Shown piece after piece: positions 9,001-18,900 of a stretch of DNA of 64,000 nt. The stretch's first letter is position 1. Every line of letters begins with the position of its first letter. The stretch lies in assembly GCF_037042905.1 (NCBI RefSeq), contig NC_087261.1, forward strand, positions 1,798,001 to 1,862,000. The letters are read 5' to 3'. The position numbers and the translations under genes were made by a program. The notes under the pieces are model-generated. The model was not told the origin of the DNA. It saw only the letters and a list, made by a program, of their open reading frames with translations, and did not search any database. This DNA is from Lytechinus pictus (taxonomy: Eukaryota).

Positions 9001-12000
9001 ATGTATTCTACTATTTTTCAGTATTAAGTCACCTTAACTTTGATGAAAACGTGAGATGTGGTTTACAACAACAAAGTATTCTATTCTTTTTTCATAGTTG
9101 CAGACAGCGAAAGCTCTGTGTCATCAGGCAGCCTACCTCTTGCGGTATCACATAAAGGTTTGTCTAAAGACGATCTGAGTTCCGTCATTGGTGAGAATAT
9201 GGATGCACCAAACAGACTTATGGCTGATCCTAACAGCTATGGCTCTGTAGCTGTCGGCTTTCCCGATTTGCAGGTGAGCGTCTGTTTTTTGTTTGTTTTT
9301 AGAGTGTTCCTAAAACATATCTTTTATTTGAAGCAGTCATATAATCTCTAATACCTCATTCCCACATGTATGCTATCTGTTACGATTGGCCTTTTGTAGC
9401 TGATCGCCAAAATTTTTTGAGCCGTTCAAAGTTTTTCTTCAGACAAAACGATTGCTGCAACTGACATCAAGATCTGATGAGATCTGGCACGATCACTATG
9501 GTTACTCCATGATTAAGACCACGGTCTTAATTTAGGCGCAAAACGTGACAGTGGAACTAGATATAAGCAATGTCAATTTGAAGTTATGATATAGTACCTT
9601 TCCAAATGTTTTGGCATATTTTTCTATGTATTGTACATGTATTGTAAATGCTGAAAATAATAACTCTTTAGACAGCTTACAACTGTATGAAATGTATTTT
9701 TTTCATTTTGCCAGTCTTCTGTAGATGTGTACAGTGCACCACGTCCTGCCCCACCTTCAGCCCAGCCTTCAGGACGTGACCCCCTAGCATCTCTCATGAA
9801 GAAGACTGGTACAACAGCCCCCACCGGTAGCCCTGTGGTACTCCCAGACTCTGCTCAGGTCGTCAGGGTCCTCAACAGCAAACAGGTTCCGAAGGAAGTC
9901 TTCCCAGATGGTAAGAGATTTAAGACCCCATTCTCAACTACTTGCCAGTTTAACATGTAATGGGAATACCAGTACTCTAAACGATCTTACGTGGCCGGCC
10001 AAACCAGATTGGAACCATCTCGCTATTTTCAAGACAGCTTTGCTTCGTTAAATTGGTTTAATTTAAGCATAGGTGAGGATACGGCCATTCTTCAGGAAGC
10101 AATTTTTCACAAAGAAGTATCATGTTGGGCCTGCTTCTCAATACAAACTGTGTGTAGAATGCATACGCTGTGGTTTCATATCTAATGGGAAACATGTGAC
10201 CCTACTAAAATCATCCCAATTGCAACAAGATCGCATTACGGGAAGTGGCTTTGGAAACCCTTTCAAGAGATGGTGATGAGAACAGGGTGTATTATTCCTT
10301 ACCCTTGTTCAGGCACTCCTTATAGTTTTCAGACATCATGGGTCGTTGTAAGAAGCAAACATTCAATTCCAAAGTATAAGTCTAAAAAAATCTAGCATAG
10401 GTCCTTTGATTAAACACAAATTTGTAGTTAATTTGTTTTCACTTGCGTCGCAACTTTCTTGCAATTCCTTGTTATGCTAGATTTCGGGCCTAAACTTGGT
10501 TTAAAATTGAACATGAGTTTCTAGCAACAACAAACCTTCTATTTTCTTTTTTTTTTAATGTCTTTGAATTCTGTCCCTGACCTTGTCAGATTAGCCGGGC
10601 AAGGGGAGGTGATCTCCTGTGAGCGTTCAGATCTACTGAGGTACACAGGGTTCTTCTCTCAAATTTGAAAGCAGAGTATATCAAAGTGTCCTAAAAATCA
10701 TTTTTCATTTAATATTCTAACTTTGCATTTCTTATCTCCATTGTACCATGCAGAGAAAGTTCCTGTGTCCGGTGAATTCCTGGAAATAGCTGACATGTCT
10801 TCACTAACTCTCAAATACATCCCCATTCCAAGGTATGTAAATCCATCTCTTTAAAGTTTTTATTCACAAATCTACAAAGCCACTGGGAGATACAGGCTTT
10901 TGCACATCCTCTCTCTGAAATGATCTCCCTCTTATTTTTTTTCAAGACTGCACTTCTTTTGACACATTTACCAGTTACCTATTCCATGCTTCCTACTCTT
11001 ACTTTCCCTCAAGTCTCTCTTTAATTTTTCACCATACGTTCTTCTTCCATTGCACCTTGAGCGCTCTGCAGAGTGGACTTGACACACCATATGTATTATT
11101 ATGAGGTATTTTAATTTGAAAATAGGCTCATGACTCTCTGATGTTTAAAGATGCTTGTCCTATTGGTTTGACCAAAATGTGTGTCATCATTCATCAATCT
11201 TCCTTTTTGTGCAAATGCATGATAGGTAGATCTTATTGTGATAATAATATGGTCCTTATATAGTACATAATATTCATAATAATCTATGAGCTTTATAAAA
11301 GTTTTCTATGAACTTTGTATGGTTTGCATGTTGGTGAAGCTGAAATAGAGGAGGTTTACTGTTCACCGTCTTAGTCATGAAAAAGACTGTTGGTGAATTG
11401 AGAAGTGAAAAACAAAGAGATTGAGTGGGAAAAGAAAGGCGAGAAAAGAGATAGATGGCAGAGGAGAATAAGCTTTCATGAGATAAGTTGTAAGATATTG
11501 TACTTCCTATTATTTGTGTATGACCAAATTTCGCTTTTTCCTGATGAAAATAAATGAAACATGCAAATGTCAAGAACCATAATATTATGTCTTTCTGCAG
11601 TCCTACAGTACATCGTAACTACACCCCATGGGTGTCTGATAGTAAGATTCTTACAGCTCCTACACCAAGCGAGGGCGTTGTCACTGTCGACTCGGGTGGT
11701 CATGTGAGGCTGTGGGAGACAGGGCGCCCTCAGTTGTCCAAGTCGCTCACCGACTGGTATAAAATGATTGGAACCGCAGAAGACGCCAAACTGCAAGTAA
11801 GTGAAAATATGTTGCTTTTTATTATATATTTTCAAATTCTTTTAATCATTACTGTGTACCCTTTTCTGATATTGATTTTTTACTATCTTATCCTTAAGGG
11901 CTAGGGTTCTAAAGTTTGTTTTGTTGAAGTGCCAAGTTTGTTATCGGAAATCTGTACTGCTCCACTGTCTGAAACTTGTAGCGAGCAAAATGTTACAGTG

Positions 12001-15000
12001 TGGGTTCAAAGCATTTAAATGAAAACTTTAAATTGTATTACTTAAAAAAGACTTGTATACAAATTCAACGCAATAGATAAGGAAAAACTCATAATTTACT
12101 TTTTTTAAGCAGCTTGCATATGCCACTCAACTTGGGCAAATGCGCACAATTAGGGCTTTATTTATCATGTATTCATACTTGTGATTCTGTTCCGATAAAA
12201 TTCTATAATATGTCCAGTGTTAAGAGGGAGCTCACCTAGAGCTGAATGAGATAATTTTCTCAATCTTTTACTGTCTTTATTCCCATCAGATCACGTATGA
12301 TAAGGATGAAGTAGGTGATATATCAGAGCCTAAGTTTGGAGAGATTGATCAGTCTAATAACCCTCATGTTGGCGGCAACCGTTGGGCAGGAGGAACGGGT
12401 AAGATTGATTCTATTATACCTTTTAGAAAGTAAAATATCAAGACCTAAACTACTTCATATACTCCCTGCATTCTTATCCAGGATGCAGTACTTTTATATG
12501 AAGTCTTATGATGCATCATTACTATCAAGATGAATATTAGCATTCTGTTATATTACTCAAACCACAACATTTGCCAAAATAATATGTGATAAGTATGCTT
12601 CCATTCATTGACCTTATACATATGAGAGGATATAAGAATAAGCGTAGAGTTGTCTGGCATGTGCCAGCTGCAGATCACCAATGCATGCAAGGCAATGGCT
12701 TCAGCCTCTAAGATGGCGATGCGATGATGTCAATACATAAGTGTTATTCCTATTTTTTCAATCATTGCCAAATAACAATCTTAAAGTTGAAATACAGAGG
12801 ATGGCAATGGGAGAAAATAGAATTTACATAATGTATGAATTACTTGTAAATGTACTTAAGTAAAGCAAATATGTAGTTCTTTTAATGAATTGTTTATTTT
12901 ATAGGAGGTCGAGATACCGCTGGTTAAGGTGGTATACGAGGTCCATTCAGATTAGATGCTGGTCATGATGTTCATCATTTTGATATTTTTTTTATTTATT
13001 AGGAGGTCTAGATACCACTAGTTTAGGTGGTTTAGGTAGGTGGAGGACCATTTAGATGCTGGTCATGATGCACATCATTTTAATATTTTGATGTCTTGTT
13101 TATTTTGTAGGAGGTCAAGATACTAAATTAGATTAGACATTCATCATTTTGATATCTTGTTTATTTTGTAGGAGGTCGAGATACCGCTGGTTTAGGGGGT
13201 GTCGGAGCAACATTCATATTAGATACATGTACAGGTCATGATTTTTATCATTTTGATATTATGTTTATTTTGTAGAAGGTCGAGATACTAAATTAGGTTA
13301 GATGTTCATCGTTTTGATATCTTGTTTATTTTGTAGGAGGTCGAGATACTGCTGGTCTGGTGGTATTGGAGGGCCATTCATATTTGATGCTGGTTTTGAT
13401 GTTCATTTTGATATTATTTTCTTTAGGTGGTCGAGATACTAAATTAGATTAGATGTTCATCGTTTGATATCTTGTTTATTTTGTAGGAGGCCGAGATACC
13501 GCTGGTATGGGTGGTATAGGAGGTCCATTCAGATTAGATGCTGGTCATGATGTTCATCAAGTCTCACAGGCTATGAAGGATGCTGTACCAGAAGAGGTAA
13601 GAATTTATTCATATTAAAAATCTGTTTGATAATGATAATATTGATATTATCATCATCATCATCATAATAATGATATAATAATAATGATAATAACAATGAT
13701 AATAATAGGTACATTTATATAGCACGTAATAATTAATGTTTCTGAGTGCTTTACATTGTAATTATTATTACTCCGGTCATCGGATCCTTGCATGCCTGCA
13801 AACAATGTATGCACTCTCTCCACTCCCTGGGGAGCATTCCAACAAGAGTTCCAAGACTCCATTGCTAGGCATACTACATAGGCTTTGTCAACCTGGCCTG
13901 TGCATTACAACATTGTAATGAGAAGAATAAATCATGTTACCTATTGCTAATGGGGATAACGTGATTTACTGATTACCACGTGTGGTTGTGCATTATTCAT
14001 TGTAAGTGGTGACAACTTCTGAAATGCCCTAAATGAAGAAGTGCCCATAAATAAATGAATCAGTGATAGATATTTGCAAGTAGATAGGGATTATGATACA
14101 TTTTCATAAAGATAATATCGATTAGTCCGAAATTGCATTATTCCAAAGGTTCAGTAGTTGCAAAATAACTACTAATAACTTCATTTGGGATCATCGAACC
14201 TCCAGATTTAAGAAACATATGTAGTTTTCAGATCAACAGACATGAACTGATTTTTGTAATAATGCCTCAGATTTAATGAAACTTGGGAATTATGAACCTT
14301 AAGAATAATGAACATTTGGAATAGCAAGTTGTAACTATTTATCCACCTAGGTGAGGAAAGCTGCAAGAGAGATGGCTCAGAAGGCTTACAAGGCAAGACT
14401 CAAGGAAATTGATATGTCTGAGTATGATGCAGAGACCTATGACAGATTCTCAGACGGTGTCAAGAGACAGGTCACTTCCCTTAGGGTTATTCTAGATAGT
14501 CTACAGGTAGGTTAACATGCAATCAAGTATGAGTAGTTTGCAATCAATTATGATAGGTTAGGCAATCAAGTATGGATTAGGCAATCATGTATGGATTTGG
14601 CAATCAAGTATGGATTTGGCAATCAAGTATGGAATTTGCAAGTGTCGTTTTTCAAATCATGTACGGTGGTTTTGCAATATTAGATAATGGCTATGTTCTC
14701 AAATATGGTGGATTGCAAATCAAACATGAATTTTCATTCAAATATGAATGTGTGATCAAATTTAAATTGCGTTCATTGTGTCAGATTGCATTTTAATGTG
14801 TTGAATTTTTCAATCAATTATCGTGGATTCACAATCAAATACAGCAGATTTCCAATCAGATATGCTGGATGCTCAACAAATAATTCTGTTTCCAATCATT
14901 TTCTTGGTAATTGGTTTGTTTTTGTATTTTTTTTAGGCAAAAGCCAAAGAAAGGCAGTGGATCAAACACCAATCGTCTGGAGATCTTGATGAAGTGAAAT

Positions 15001-15921
15001 TAATTGAAGGACTGACCGGAGAGAAGGCTATCTACAAAAGGAGGGGCGAACAAGATCCAGAAGTAAGAAATGGAATAAAGAGACAAAGAGAGATGTAGTG
15101 AGAAAGAAAGAGAGGAAGAGACAAGGGTAGAAACCCAGAAAAAAAAGCATGGAAAGACTCAGAGAGGGGGGAAAAGAAGGAAATAAATGAGAAAGAGATC
15201 ATACTTGAAGTGTTAGGAATATGGAGTGCTGTGGCCCAGTGGATTAGTCTCCAAACTTTGAAACAGAGGGTCATGGGTCCAAATCCAAACTACATGTATT
15301 GTGTAATTTCCTCCAACAAGAAATTGATCCACAATGTGCTGCACTCGACCTAGGTGAAGTAAATCAACTGAATTTTATTAATTTCTTCTTTCACTCTTAC
15401 TCTCTTTCAGATGGGAAGCCCACAGGAGCATCCAAAGAGATTAAGGCTTGTAGTTGATGTGAGTGGTAGCATGTATCGGTTCAATGGACATGATGGACGT
15501 CTAGACAGAACTCTACAGGCTATATGCATGGCTATGGAAGCGTTTGAAGGCTATGAAGAAAAGTTTGCTGTAAGTGTGCCCTCTTCTTATTCTTCTTAAT
15601 ATGTTTGAAATTTTCTTGATCTTCAAATATCAATGCACATATTTATACCATTGGTACAAGCCTGCTGAGCTTTTGATTGCCCCCCCCCCCCCCACTATCT
15701 GTATTCATATATTACTTTGTATATATTTTTATTGTGGAAATGAATGGAAAATTAAAAAATTGGGTTCATTTGAAATCTTATCTGAAGTTGTGGTATAACT
15801 ACGTGTATGGATAGCCAATAGTGACACAAATCTCGAACAGTACAGTTTCAATTTTTTACCATTAAAGCATGAGGAAATGGCACAGTAAAGATAAGAAACA
15901 TACAATTGTAACATCGTTTTT

Positions 15922-15952
<31 letters not shown>

Positions 15953-18900
15953 TGCTTCCCATAATTTCAACATGTAGTTATAACATGGCCTAACTTAAAC
16001 TCAGTTTCAGAATACAGGTGTAAAAGTTCATAGATATTGCAAGTCAGATGTGATTTGGGTAAATATTAAGTTTGTACCAGGTAATTTCATTTTGCCCTAT
16101 TTTCTCATCTCATTCTTTTTCCTAATTACCTTAAATGTGTTCAGCAGAAACTACATGAAAATAATGTGTCATCTCTTTTTTGTGTGTGTTTTTAGTATGA
16201 TATTGTAGGCCACTCTGGAGAGACATGTGATGAAGTCTTCCTCAAATCTGACAAGGTTCCAAAGAACAACAATGAAAGACTCAAAGTCCTGAGGGTAAGT
16301 TATTTCCTATGCAACCCTCAAGATTGTCCATCCTTATAATTCTTGACTAAGCTACTCTTGATAATATTCAAATTCAACGTCTTACTAATCACATCATTAC
16401 GACTTCTCTAAGCATTTTATATTGTTACCCTAGTCATTTGATTCTGGATTACCCATAAATGTATATGCATAATCTCCAGTCACTGGTGATAATTCCAGAA
16501 AAGCTGTCAAGGCGCTATTATAGCTAAGCCAATGACATTGATGTTTGCATTCCAACAGGTACCTATTTAAGACCTTGATAGAAAGAAATGCCTAGGTTGC
16601 ATTTGTAAACAAGACCTTCTGGTTAAAATGCAAGAGTTGGAACCACTACATCATGACACTTCCACTTGAATATATTCAATTTATTTCTCAATACTTTCAT
16701 GACTTAAATCTTCAGTATCCATACATTCCTATAAGATTAGGAACCATGTTGAGTTCTGCCTTGGATACAAAGTCTGAGGCACCTTCAAGTCTTGTTTAGA
16801 TATGAATGATTTGATTTGATTTGATTTTGATTTTATTTTATTTACCAATATAAAATCAATACATATATATAAAATTACAACATAATATTATACATGATAA
16901 AATAACATTGGATGGATCGCCCTACTCAGCTGAGCCATTACAGCACAACGGTTCTGCCGAGGGGTCCAGCTATATCAAATAAAAAATATGAAATTCATAT
17001 TACAAAAATAAATTCTTTAACAAATTTGTGTAACATAAAAGCAACATCAGTTAAAGGGAGAAACAGCAATCCCACCCCATCCTACAGTAGAAACTGAGTA
17101 CCCAACCGCACCCACCACCCATCCCAAAAGTGCCCCCAAGTTATATGTTTGAACTTTGGTTTAAAGGGAAATAGTTTTCAGGATTTGGTCATTAAGTGTC
17201 CATGATGTCCATGATAAAGCACAGCAATGATTTTCATGGGTTCTAGATATTGTGAGACAAAATGCACCATGCTAGAAATTTAGCAAAATAATGACATCTT
17301 CCATCAAGGATATTTAAGAGACTAATTAGTGGTGCGCTAGCAACTTGTAGTCTTCCTAATTCTGAGATTACTTCTCTTTCTTATCTATCCTAAATTGTAG
17401 AACCTCCACACTAACACTCTATCTTGCTTAAGCGGTGGCAACACTTGTAGTCTTCCTAATTCTGAGATTACTTCTCTTTCTTATCTATCCTAAATTGAAG
17501 AACCTCCACACTAACACTCTATCTTGCTTAAGCGGTGGCAACACTGTTGAAGCAGCTACAACGTCCATCCAAGATATCCCCAACAAGACTGAAGATTAGT
17601 ATTTTATCAACTTAATAATCCTTCAATTTCTTCTCATTCTTATCTTTCTCACATCTCAGAACCTCCATGCTCATGCTCAATTCTGCCTCAGCGGTGACAA
17701 CACCGTTGAAGCAGCAAAGACAGCCATCCAGGACATCGTCAAGGAGGAAGCCGATGAGTACTTTGTCATCATCCTGAGTGATGCTAACCTAGATCGGTAT
17801 GGTATCAGTCCTAAGGTTCTATCACGCGTCATGCAGCAGGATGAAGATGTTAATGCCTATGCCATCTTCATAGGATCTATAGGAGATCAGGCAGGAAGGT
17901 AAGGAGGGGATCTACTGCATTTTGGGTGATTGACAGGAGAGTAAAGACAAGGCATTGGTAGAGATGCCAACCATTACCTGTTTTAATAATAATAGCTAGA
18001 TTTATAAAGCGCTTTTTGCCTGAGGATACAAAGCGCTGCTATTATTACCCCGGGTTTAGCTCGAGCTACATGTACCATCACCGTTACTCAGTGCATGCAA
18101 GGAATTACTCCTGCTGGGTACCCATTCACTCACCTCACCTGGGTCGAGTGCAGCACAGTGTGGATAAATTTCTTGCTGAAGGAAAACACGCCATGGCTTG
18201 GATTCGAACCCACGACCCTCTGTTTCAAAGGCGAGAGTCAGAACCACTAGACCATGACGTAATTATTACCCTTTTGCAACCAAATTACGGCATTATGTTT
18301 TTCCTTCATTAAATATGAATTTCTTTATTATTATTTTTTTTTTTAATTGTATCCTATCGATGGAAATTTTCTCTATAGTTCTCTATTTCATAAAACTTAC
18401 ACAAGTTAGATAATTGGATGGATGTCGTTTTAGGTACTAGATCAAAGGTCACGAGTTGGTCTATATTAAAAAATACAGATTTAAGGATCACTGAATTCAG
18501 TTTCTCATTCCCAGAGTTTGGCAGGTCTGGTTGTAATTGCCCTATTTAGAAATTATTTTTTTGTTGGAAATTCCTATTCTTTTGCTATTCCTTTTTTTTT
18601 GGGGGGGGGGGTAACACAAGGTTGGGAGCTCTGCATTGGTAAGTGCATGTCAGTCTAGGACAGCATTTCTTTAAAATTTGTCAGATAAACAGTCGTTTGT
18701 CGGATAAAGCTACAGACAAGTTCATTCATGAAACGTTCCCAGTGCCTCTCAGCCAATCAAAATCATGGAAATTGTATCGTCTGACAATAAATGTTGATGA
18801 AATGCTCTCCTGTTCTCAAGAGATGATGTCTATCCAATTTCATTAGGATCAACTTGAATTTTGTTTGCCCTCCTTAACAAGGTTTCTCATTCTGTTTTCT

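What the first reader, a model, noticed from the sequence alone, without database searches (positions are those of the whole stretch)
12885..13596. Array of seven decoy splice acceptors with partial exon copies before a VWA8 exon; all lead to stops
Seen: the unit 'intron 3' end + first 15-75 nt of the exon' occurs 8 times. From copy 2 on it alternates long/short, a higher-order repeat. Decoys at 13172 and 13337 have the same acceptor context as the real site (gatatcttgtttattttgtag|GAGG). Translating from each decoy AG in the phase of the upstream exon gives a premature stop in all 7 (TAA within 8 codons for 12905, TAG for the others). All decoys read GGT at the codon where the functional copy reads GGC. 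Established: scanning normally favours the first suitable AG after a branch point, so correct splicing should rely on exon definition from the donor at 13597. Inference: either tolerated junction duplications or a tunable unproductive-splicing (NMD) array whose copy number sets VWA8 dosage.
Basis: partly seen in the sequence, partly recalled or inferred. Interest (0 to 1): 0.75.

Follow-up and report, generated by a model that had tools for sequence, protein, structure and literature searches.

The report
Silent splice-acceptor minisatellite in urchin VWA8
In the painted sea urchin's VWA8 gene, the border between an intron and the next exon has been copied seven extra times in a row. The gene models use only the last, genuine copy, so this is a tolerated repeat of a known kind ("mirage"), not a shown dosage control.

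Summary
Eight head-to-tail copies of "intron tail + exon start" lie at 12880-13561. They come as long (~100 nt) and short (~61 nt) units, and the last six form three S+L pairs with a 165-nt period. Two decoys share the real site's 21-nt acceptor context, and all seven lead to stops.

The NMD-dosage reading is not supported.
- Every gene model (L. pictus twice, L. variegatus, S. purpuratus, Diadema, Ptychodera) joins ...WAGGT|GGRDTAG..., which is the last acceptor.
- Three RNA runs cover both flanking exons. They give zero depth over 12888-13281 and at most one read's worth over 13282-13478.
- "All lead to stops" has about a 0.75 probability by chance.
- The GGT/GGC contrast is a L. pictus-specific synonymous change. 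The real exons of L. variegatus and Diadema read GGT.

L. variegatus carries an array at the same position, but with four decoys, a different order, and one acceptor AG lost. Diadema has none. The array is therefore older than the split of the two Lytechinus species and is still turning over.

This matches the "mirage" minisatellites described in amphioxus. Earlier notes from this scan flagged the same kind of array in about a dozen other genes of this genome.

Caveat: the read tool did not list junction reads from donor 12398, so low-level decoy use hidden by NMD is not excluded.

The parts
12293..12398 (+). Upstream VWA8 exon (...ITYDKDEVGDISEPKFGEIDQSNNPHVGGNRWAGGT + first base of a split Gly codon). 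Donor CGG|gtaagatt at 12399.
   Evidence: tblastn of L. pictus VWA8 P0270; donor sequence; RNA depth in bin 12297-12493.
12880..12979 (+). Decoy c1 (long): original intron tail, AG at 12903-12904, then 75 nt of exon-like sequence from 12905. In-phase TAA at 12925. 89% alike to the real unit.
12980..13079 (+). Decoy c2 (long, the most diverged, with a small insertion): AG at 13001-13002, exon-like part from 13003. Its 3' end and the following tail (GCACATCATTTTAATATTTTGATGTCTTG) match unit Lv4 of L. variegatus.
13080..13146 (+). Decoy c3 (short): AG at 13109-13110, 36-nt exon-like part with two internal deletions. In-phase TAG at 13134.
13147..13250 (+). Decoy c4 (long): AG at 13170-13171. Its 21-nt acceptor context is identical to the real site.
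13251..13311 (+). Decoy c5 (short): AG at 13274-13275, exon-like part starts AAGG.
13312..13404 (+). Decoy c6 (long): AG at 13335-13336. Acceptor context identical to the real site. Best match in L. variegatus is unit Lv1 (86%).
13405..13461 (+). Decoy c7 (short): AG at 13425-13426 (ttttctttag|GTGG). Best match in L. variegatus is unit Lv2 (93%), whose AG has become GG.
13462..13486 (+). 3' splice-site module of the real exon. Candidate branch points are ttcAt (A at -28) and ttgAt (A at -20), followed by a pyrimidine tract and AG at 13485-13486. No other AG lies between them.
   Evidence: The branch-point assignment is inferred from sequence, not shown.
13487..13596 (+). Real VWA8 exon (G|GRDTAGMGGIGGPFRLDAGHDVHQVSQAMKDAVPEE). 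Donor GAG|gtaagaat at 13597.
   Evidence: RNA depth in bin 13479-13675.
13080..13561 (+). Higher-order repeat: three short+long pairs with a 165-nt period. The last pair ends in the start of the real exon.
   Evidence: TRF period 165 over 12967-13539; family D4, 121 nt, 88% alike, 165 nt apart.

Best explanation
This is a 'mirage'-type minisatellite. A segment of about 100 nt, made of the last ~25 nt of the intron (candidate branch point, pyrimidine tract, AG) plus the first 73-75 nt of a VWA8 exon, was duplicated in tandem by slippage or unequal exchange.

One copy later lost two internal pieces and became the short unit. In the L. pictus lineage, short+long pairs were then amplified as a 165-nt higher-order unit.

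Only the last copy is continuous with the rest of the exon and its donor at 13597. The spliceosome pairs that acceptor with the donor across a 110-nt exon (exon definition). The seven upstream copies stay inside the 1088-nt intron and are removed with it.

The array is a tolerated by-product of repeat turnover, not a device.

Shown: the anatomy; the use of the last acceptor in all gene models; the lack of RNA depth on the decoys; an array at the same position but rearranged in L. variegatus; no such array in Diadema.

Inferred: exon definition as the reason for the choice, and neutrality.
For: Anatomy:
- 8 copies against 0 expected by chance.
- TRF period 165, 3.5 copies; aligned units.

Identity of the locus:
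- The window is L. pictus assembly GCA_037042905.1 (exact match of 12300-13800 in L004).
- The gene is VWA8.

Acceptor use:
- P0270 and P0271 (L. pictus), P0001 (L. variegatus), P0151 (S. purpuratus), P0152 (Diadema) and P0153 (Ptychodera) all read ...WAGGT|GGRDTAG(M/L)GG... This needs the last acceptor.

RNA:
- In three stranded, rRNA-depleted runs the exon-bearing bins have mean depth 3.3-6.2.
- Bins 12888-13084 and 13085-13281 have depth 0 in all three runs.
- Bin 13282-13478 has 0, 0 and 0.26.
- Eight further runs each hold 0.16 of the sampled words of 11500-15700. The exons alone predict 0.162; exons plus the array predict 0.30.

Evolution:
- L. variegatus has an array at the same place with units L, S, L, L, real.
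- It shares the short type and a specific junction variant with L. pictus.
- Its short unit has lost the AG.
- Array blocks are 80-86% alike between the species. A 596-nt intron-only stretch is 83% alike, and flanking stretches that include an exon are 79-87%.
- The Diadema intron (367 nt, same position and phase) has no copy.

Known class:
Against: - No junction read from 12398 to 13487 was listed by the read tool.
- The RNA samples carry a diverged haplotype: four synonymous differences in the 106-nt upstream exon, in all reads. Reads from a diverged array might therefore have failed the 90% threshold.
- Exon depth is only about 5-10 reads per run, so the bound on decoy use is roughly 5% of steady-state mRNA. 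NMD could hide more.
- The first 13 nt after the decoy AGs are less diverged than the rest of the unit: 3/91 against 83/411 differences, Fisher P = 2e-5. The test is post hoc and the copies are not independent. Plain neutral drift does not predict it.
Confidence: 0.8

Rival explanations
1. Unproductive-splicing sink. Some pre-mRNAs splice from donor 12398 to a decoy AG. The mRNA then carries a premature stop and is destroyed by NMD, so the number and strength of decoys set VWA8 output.
For: - Two decoys have an acceptor context identical to the real one over 21 nt, and every unit carries its own candidate branch point and pyrimidine tract.
- All decoys give stops.
- 10 of 11 decoys across the two species keep the AG.
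- The 13-nt core after the AG is unusually well kept.
- Copy number differs between species, as a 'tunable' element would.
Against: - No RNA depth on decoys in three runs, and exon-only word share in eight more.
- No gene model uses a decoy.
- The stops are expected by chance, P about 0.75. Keeping 10 of 11 AGs has P about 0.11 under uniform drift.
- One decoy lost its AG in L. variegatus.
- Array blocks diverge between species about as fast as the flanking intron.
- Diadema does without any array.
- By earlier scan notes, the same repeat type sits in many unrelated genes of this genome. That fits a mutational by-product better than gene-specific control.
Confidence: 0.1
2. Decoy acceptors as a cis-acting splicing aid. 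The repeated branch-point, pyrimidine-tract and AG modules recruit U2AF/U2 near the real site and raise the efficiency of the last acceptor without being used themselves.
For: - The tail plus core is nearly identical in c4, c6 and the real unit.
- The core is less diverged than the rest of the unit.
Against: - There is no direct evidence.
- L. variegatus units near the real exon share a derived change (attatgtag), so concerted evolution can explain the local similarity.
- Diadema splices the same exon from a 367-nt intron with no repeat.
Confidence: 0.05
3. Assembly artefact. The array does not exist in the animal, or not at this size.
For: - No DNA run of this species was available to lay on the array.
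- Only one L. pictus assembly carries the protein on record.
Against: - The copies differ by 13-31%, so each is uniquely placed. Assembler-made expansions are near-identical.
- An independently sequenced species has an array at the same position with shared unit types and junction variants.
Confidence: 0.02

Closest known systems
Amphioxus 'mirage' minisatellites (Adh3, globin BflGb6/BflGb9, troponin C, PGBD5)
   Same: - Tandem, minisatellite-like duplication of an intron/exon boundary.
- Many copies keep the AG.
- The authentic end copy is the one found in the transcript.
- Units of tens to ~160 nt.
- Copy number differs between haplotypes or species.
- Concerted evolution within the cluster (PMC3087553 section 16; PMC3902484).
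   Different: - The host is an echinoid, not a cephalochordate.
- Copies here are old and diverged (69-87% alike), against 81-100% for BflGb6.
- There is a two-type (long/short) higher-order structure.
- An array sits at the same position in a second species.
- My four literature searches turned up no description of mirages in sea urchins. This is a limited search.
Human F7 intron 7 37-bp VNTR spanning the exon 7 donor (Borensztajn et al. 2006, PMC1557585)
   Same: A minisatellite whose end unit spans an exon/intron border. It yields several identical pseudo splice sites that stay silent, while the exon-adjacent site is used.
   Different: It lies on the donor side, where the first copy is used. 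Here it is the acceptor side, where the last copy is used. The F7 case was tested with 50 constructs; nothing has been tested here.
Poison exons and regulated unproductive splicing coupled to NMD (own knowledge, for example in SR-protein genes)
   Same: Alternative splice choices that would bring in a premature stop.
   Different: Those elements are strongly conserved and their transcripts are detectable and rise on NMD block. Here the decoys vary between sister species and no such RNA was seen.
NAGNAG and other tandem acceptors (own knowledge)
   Same: More than one usable AG close to an exon start.
   Different: Those sites lie 3-12 nt apart, share one branch point, and both products are usually in frame. 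Here the AGs lie 60-108 nt apart, each with its own upstream module, and none gives an open product.

Membership tests
Mirage minisatellite (tandem duplication of an intron/exon boundary) | Head-to-tail repeats of minisatellite unit size | tested here: met
   8 units of 60-108 nt; TRF period 165, 3.5 copies, score 593.
Mirage minisatellite (tandem duplication of an intron/exon boundary) | The unit spans the boundary and carries the splice signal plus exon sequence | tested here: met
   Each unit is about 25 nt of intron tail with AG, plus 35-79 nt of exon-like sequence.
Mirage minisatellite (tandem duplication of an intron/exon boundary) | One end copy is the authentic boundary that enters the transcript | tested here: met
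   The last unit runs on into exon 13487-13596, which is encoded exactly in P0270.
Mirage minisatellite (tandem duplication of an intron/exon boundary) | Regular splicing is not disturbed and the extra copies are not used | tested here: inconclusive
   Gene models use the last acceptor. RNA depth is 0 on most of the array and at most one read near its end. No junction reads were listed, depth is low, and NMD was not blocked.
Mirage minisatellite (tandem duplication of an intron/exon boundary) | Length instability and repeat turnover | tested here: met
   7 decoys in L. pictus against 4 in L. variegatus, in a different order, with shared derived changes among neighbouring units. Variation within the species was not testable.
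NMD-coupled unproductive-splicing regulator | A stop-containing splice form is detectable in RNA | tested here: not met
   No depth on the decoys in three RNA runs. Word share fits exons only in eight runs. Sensitivity is about 5%.
NMD-coupled unproductive-splicing regulator | The alternative sites are conserved between species | tested here: not met
   Copy number and order differ, one AG is lost in L. variegatus, and Diadema has no copy.
NMD-coupled unproductive-splicing regulator | The form rises when NMD is blocked, and output depends on the element | not testable with these tools
   Needs experiments.

The most novel reading that the evidence does not exclude
The decoys are not inert. The acceptor core (AG plus the first 13 exon-like bases) is kept in the copies by selection or by directed conversion from the real junction. 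The array then works as a copy-number-variable sink or aid for 3' splice-site recognition. Lytechinus genomes, unlike Diadema, tolerate such arrays at exon edges in many genes, which would make them a natural, genome-wide experiment on acceptor choice.
Probability: 0.07. Interest if true: 0.6.

Novelty: new member of a known kind. Interest (0 to 1): 0.25.

Why it matters
The locus is a clean natural competition assay. Two decoys have the same branch-point candidates, pyrimidine tract, AG and first four exon bases as the real site (c4 also the same first 19 exon-like bases but one), yet they are not seen in mRNA. Acceptor choice here must therefore depend on what lies further downstream: the rest of the exon and its donor.

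The pair L. pictus / L. variegatus shows the array has lasted since before the species split while being reshuffled. This gives a time frame for how such arrays turn over.

For annotation, the array is a trap. A gene finder that takes the first good acceptor will truncate VWA8.

It does not reveal a new regulatory principle.

Tried and rejected
1. Direct junction counts. Neither 12398>13487 nor any decoy joint could be read. I fall back on depth per bin.

2. Transcript-derived protein fragments of Lytechinus spanning the junction. Two word searches for lengths of about 100-317 and 382-1216 aa found nothing above 79% identity.

3. The S. purpuratus locus. Neither P0151 nor P0002 is on record with a contig.

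4. GGT versus GGC as the mark that tells real from decoy. Rejected: the L. variegatus real exon reads GAGGTC and the Diadema exon GTGGTA.

5. GAG|GTCGAG in the decoys as a donor that would make 3-nt micro-exons or recursive sites. Rejected: it scored below the 6/9 cut-off of the donor scan. No inserted letters appear at the junction, and the real exon of L. variegatus has the same GT.

6. A 33-nt in-frame pseudo-exon 13003-13035 with donor-like TAG|GTAGGT. RNA depth there is zero.

7. Preferential birth of tandem arrays at exon edges. A permutation test on the VWA8 loci gives 3 of 9 arrays touching exons in L. pictus (2.8 expected) and 3 of 11 in L. variegatus (3.4 expected). There is no enrichment. 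Diadema has 0 of 18 (3.8 expected, P = 0.011), which is avoidance.

8. An RNA gene in the intron. No Rfam match at E up to 1 in 12300-14400.

9. The original mirage paper (PMC117041) is not held. The class is cited from PMC3087553 and PMC3902484.

Database proteins were used by id instead.

Full report
**What is there.** The window is Lytechinus pictus. Bases 12300-13800 occur exactly in locus L004 of assembly GCA_037042905.1. The gene on the + strand is VWA8. An 80-aa exon peptide finds full-length VWA8 proteins, named as such by NCBI for L. variegatus, L. pictus, S. purpuratus and Diadema.

The upstream exon ends at 12398 (CGG|gtaaga). The real exon is 13487-13596 (ttttgtag|GAGGCC ... GAG|gtaaga).

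**The array.** Between the two exons, the junction of intron tail and exon start occurs seven more times.
- The 20-mer TTTGTAGGAGGTCGAGATAC matches 8 times with up to 3 mismatches, all within 12898-13499. Shuffles give none.
- TRF reports 12967-13539 with period 165, 3.5 copies.
- Long units (90-108 nt) carry about 25 nt of intron tail plus 68-79 nt of exon-like sequence.
- Short units (60-61 nt) are long units with two internal deletions.
- The order is L, L, S, L, S, L, S, L(real).
- Copies are 69-87% alike, so this is an old array and not a fresh one.

All were checked.
- Decoys 13172 and 13337 share the real acceptor context over 21 nt.
- Every decoy leads to a stop in the phase of the upstream exon.
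- All decoys read GGT where the real exon reads GGC.

Two of these carry no weight.
- Given the local base composition, a stop is expected every 14 codons, and three of the seven decoys are out of frame with the real exon. The chance that all seven fail is about 0.75.
- The GGC is a synonymous change private to L. pictus. The real exon reads GAGGTC in L. variegatus and GTGGTA in Diadema.

**Which acceptor is used.** Every protein model reads ...WAGGT|GGRDTAG(M/L)GG..., which needs the last acceptor. This holds for two L. pictus RefSeq releases, L. variegatus, S. purpuratus, Diadema and the hemichordate Ptychodera.

I laid three stranded, rRNA-depleted RNA runs of 2026 on 12100-18000.
- The bins that hold the 106-nt and 110-nt exons have mean depth 3.3-6.2 on the RNA strand.
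- The two bins covering 12888-13281 have depth 0 in all three runs.
- The bin 13282-13478 has 0, 0 and 0.26, which is about one read.
- A transcript spliced at a decoy would keep everything from that decoy to 13596, because no good donor lies between.
- So decoy forms are at most about 5% of steady-state VWA8 mRNA in these samples.

Eight older runs from two studies each hold 0.16 of the sampled 31-mers of 11500-15700. The exons alone predict 0.162, and exons plus the array predict 0.30.

Weak points:
- The tool hid 13 weaker joints, so I saw no junction read from 12398 to any acceptor.
- The RNA individuals differ from the reference at four synonymous sites of the upstream exon.
- NMD was not blocked.

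**Relatives.** The L. variegatus VWA8 locus (L001) has an array at the same place.
- Its units are L (exon-like part from 50714), S (50809), L (50870), L (50976) and the real exon 51082-51191.
- The short type is shared. L. pictus c7 and L. variegatus unit 2 are 93% alike, and c6 and unit 1 are 86% alike.
- The odd tail GCACATCATTTTAATATTTTGATGTCTTG follows c2 in one species and unit 4 in the other.
- The array therefore predates the species split.
- It has since been reshuffled. L. pictus amplified S+L pairs, which are 88% alike. L. variegatus units 3, 4 and real share a derived attatgtag. The L. variegatus short unit has GG where the AG was.
- Blocks of the array are 80-86% alike between species. 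A 596-nt intron-only stretch is 83% alike, and flanking stretches that include an exon are 79-87%. This is the pattern of drift.
- Diadema has the same intron position and phase, a 367-nt intron, and no junction copy.

**How it most likely works.** Each unit carries candidate branch points (ttcAt at -28/-29 in six of the eight units; ttgAt or ttaAt at -20 in seven), a pyrimidine tract and an AG. The decoys are therefore complete 3' splice-site modules, and two of them equal the real one.

What sets the last copy apart is downstream. It alone continues into the rest of the exon and reaches a good donor 110 nt away. Pairing of acceptor and donor across the exon is called exon definition. I infer it selects the last copy, and the others leave with the intron.

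The donor-side analogue is documented. The human F7 intron 7 VNTR has identical pseudo-donors that stay silent behind the exon-adjacent one (PMC1557585).

[quoted passage not shown] The reported properties are the same: splice signals are kept in many copies, regular splicing is unaffected, length is unstable, and evolution is concerted (PMC3087553 section 16; PMC3902484).

Earlier notes of this scan list the same kind of array in BRCA2, cubilin, NCAPG, VPS51, DDX19, SLC4, ABCC4, CSTF3, ATP7 and CTR9 of this genome. The word 'mirage' reached me from those notes, and I checked it against the papers.

This locus is one more member. Its particular points are the long/short higher-order structure and an array at the same position in a sister species.

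**An unexplained detail.** In the long decoys of both species, the first 13 exon-like bases (GAGGTCGAGATAC) differ from the ancestral proxy at 3 of 91 sites. The rest of the exon-like part differs at 83 of 411, and the intron tail at 25 of 175.

The test is post hoc, and the copies share ancestry. The rest of the unit is internally repetitive and prone to slippage. Concerted evolution may also contribute. Still, plain drift does not predict this, so it keeps a small door open for functional decoys.

**Are arrays drawn to exon edges?** In the VWA8 loci, arrays touch exons as often as random placement predicts in both Lytechinus species. They never do in Diadema: 0 of 18 against 3.8 expected, P = 0.011. 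The data suggest tolerance in Lytechinus and not attraction.

**Verdict.** This is a new member of a known kind, of modest interest.

No N was filled.

Noticed in passing
window 17343-17658: A second acceptor-plus-exon-start duplication lies in the same gene. Two 100-nt units are 99% alike (TRF), each with ttgtag or ttgaag followed by a diverged copy of the start of exon 17659-17899. RNA joints go from 16293 to the real acceptor 17659 (16 reads), and the bins over the copies have depth 0.
   Followed up: partly
L004 21993-22413 (L. pictus VWA8, upstream of the window): A donor-side array: about 5 copies of the exon end plus GGTGAGTATG (period 79/170, 81-86% alike). The real exon is first and diverged copies follow it.
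   Followed up: partly
L004 17911-18109 and L001 25239-25508: A tandem repeat of 111-117 nt overlaps the acceptor side of the exon for residues 645-684. It is present in both Lytechinus species.
   Followed up: no
L001 52932-54099 (L. variegatus): The homologue of window exon 14351-14506 and its flanks is tandemly duplicated in L. variegatus (period 417, 2.0 copies, 99% alike; period 194, 2.2 copies). tblastn finds two extra exon copies at 87%. A DNA contig of 'organism B' shows a go-back joint 14632>14351. Whether this is real or an assembly duplication was not tested.
   Followed up: no
L001 59676-60445 (L. variegatus): The last coding exon (LPAGHGFVCMDTKTIPQIMQQIFTSTMLK, the stop, and 27 nt after it) is repeated 6.9 times as a 113-nt unit, 95% alike. 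L. pictus has one copy.
   Followed up: no
window 12905-12917 and the equivalent positions of all units: The first 13 exon-like bases of the decoys are far less diverged than the rest of the unit (3/91 against 83/411). The cause is unknown: conversion, constraint, or a slippage-prone remainder.
   Followed up: partly
window 12313, 12373, 12376, 12388: All RNA reads of three 2026 runs differ from the reference at these four synonymous sites of one 106-nt exon. The RNA animals carry a haplotype about 4% diverged from the assembly in this exon.
   Followed up: no
window 13763-13886 and 15222-15364: Highly repeated, transcribed elements with thousands of reads, many loose ends, and a tRNA-like motif GGTTCGAATCC in the loose-end consensus. 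They are probably SINE-type repeats in the introns.
   Followed up: no
P0002 (XP_011670963.1, S. purpuratus, 915 aa): This older gene model repeats two exon-derived segments and skips the exon upstream of the junction studied here. It may reflect similar duplications or haplotype mis-assembly in S. purpuratus.
   Followed up: no
L003 (Diadema antillarum VWA8 locus): None of its 18 tandem arrays with period of 20 or more touches an exon, against 3.8 expected by random placement (P = 0.011). In Lytechinus the observed and expected counts match.
   Followed up: partly
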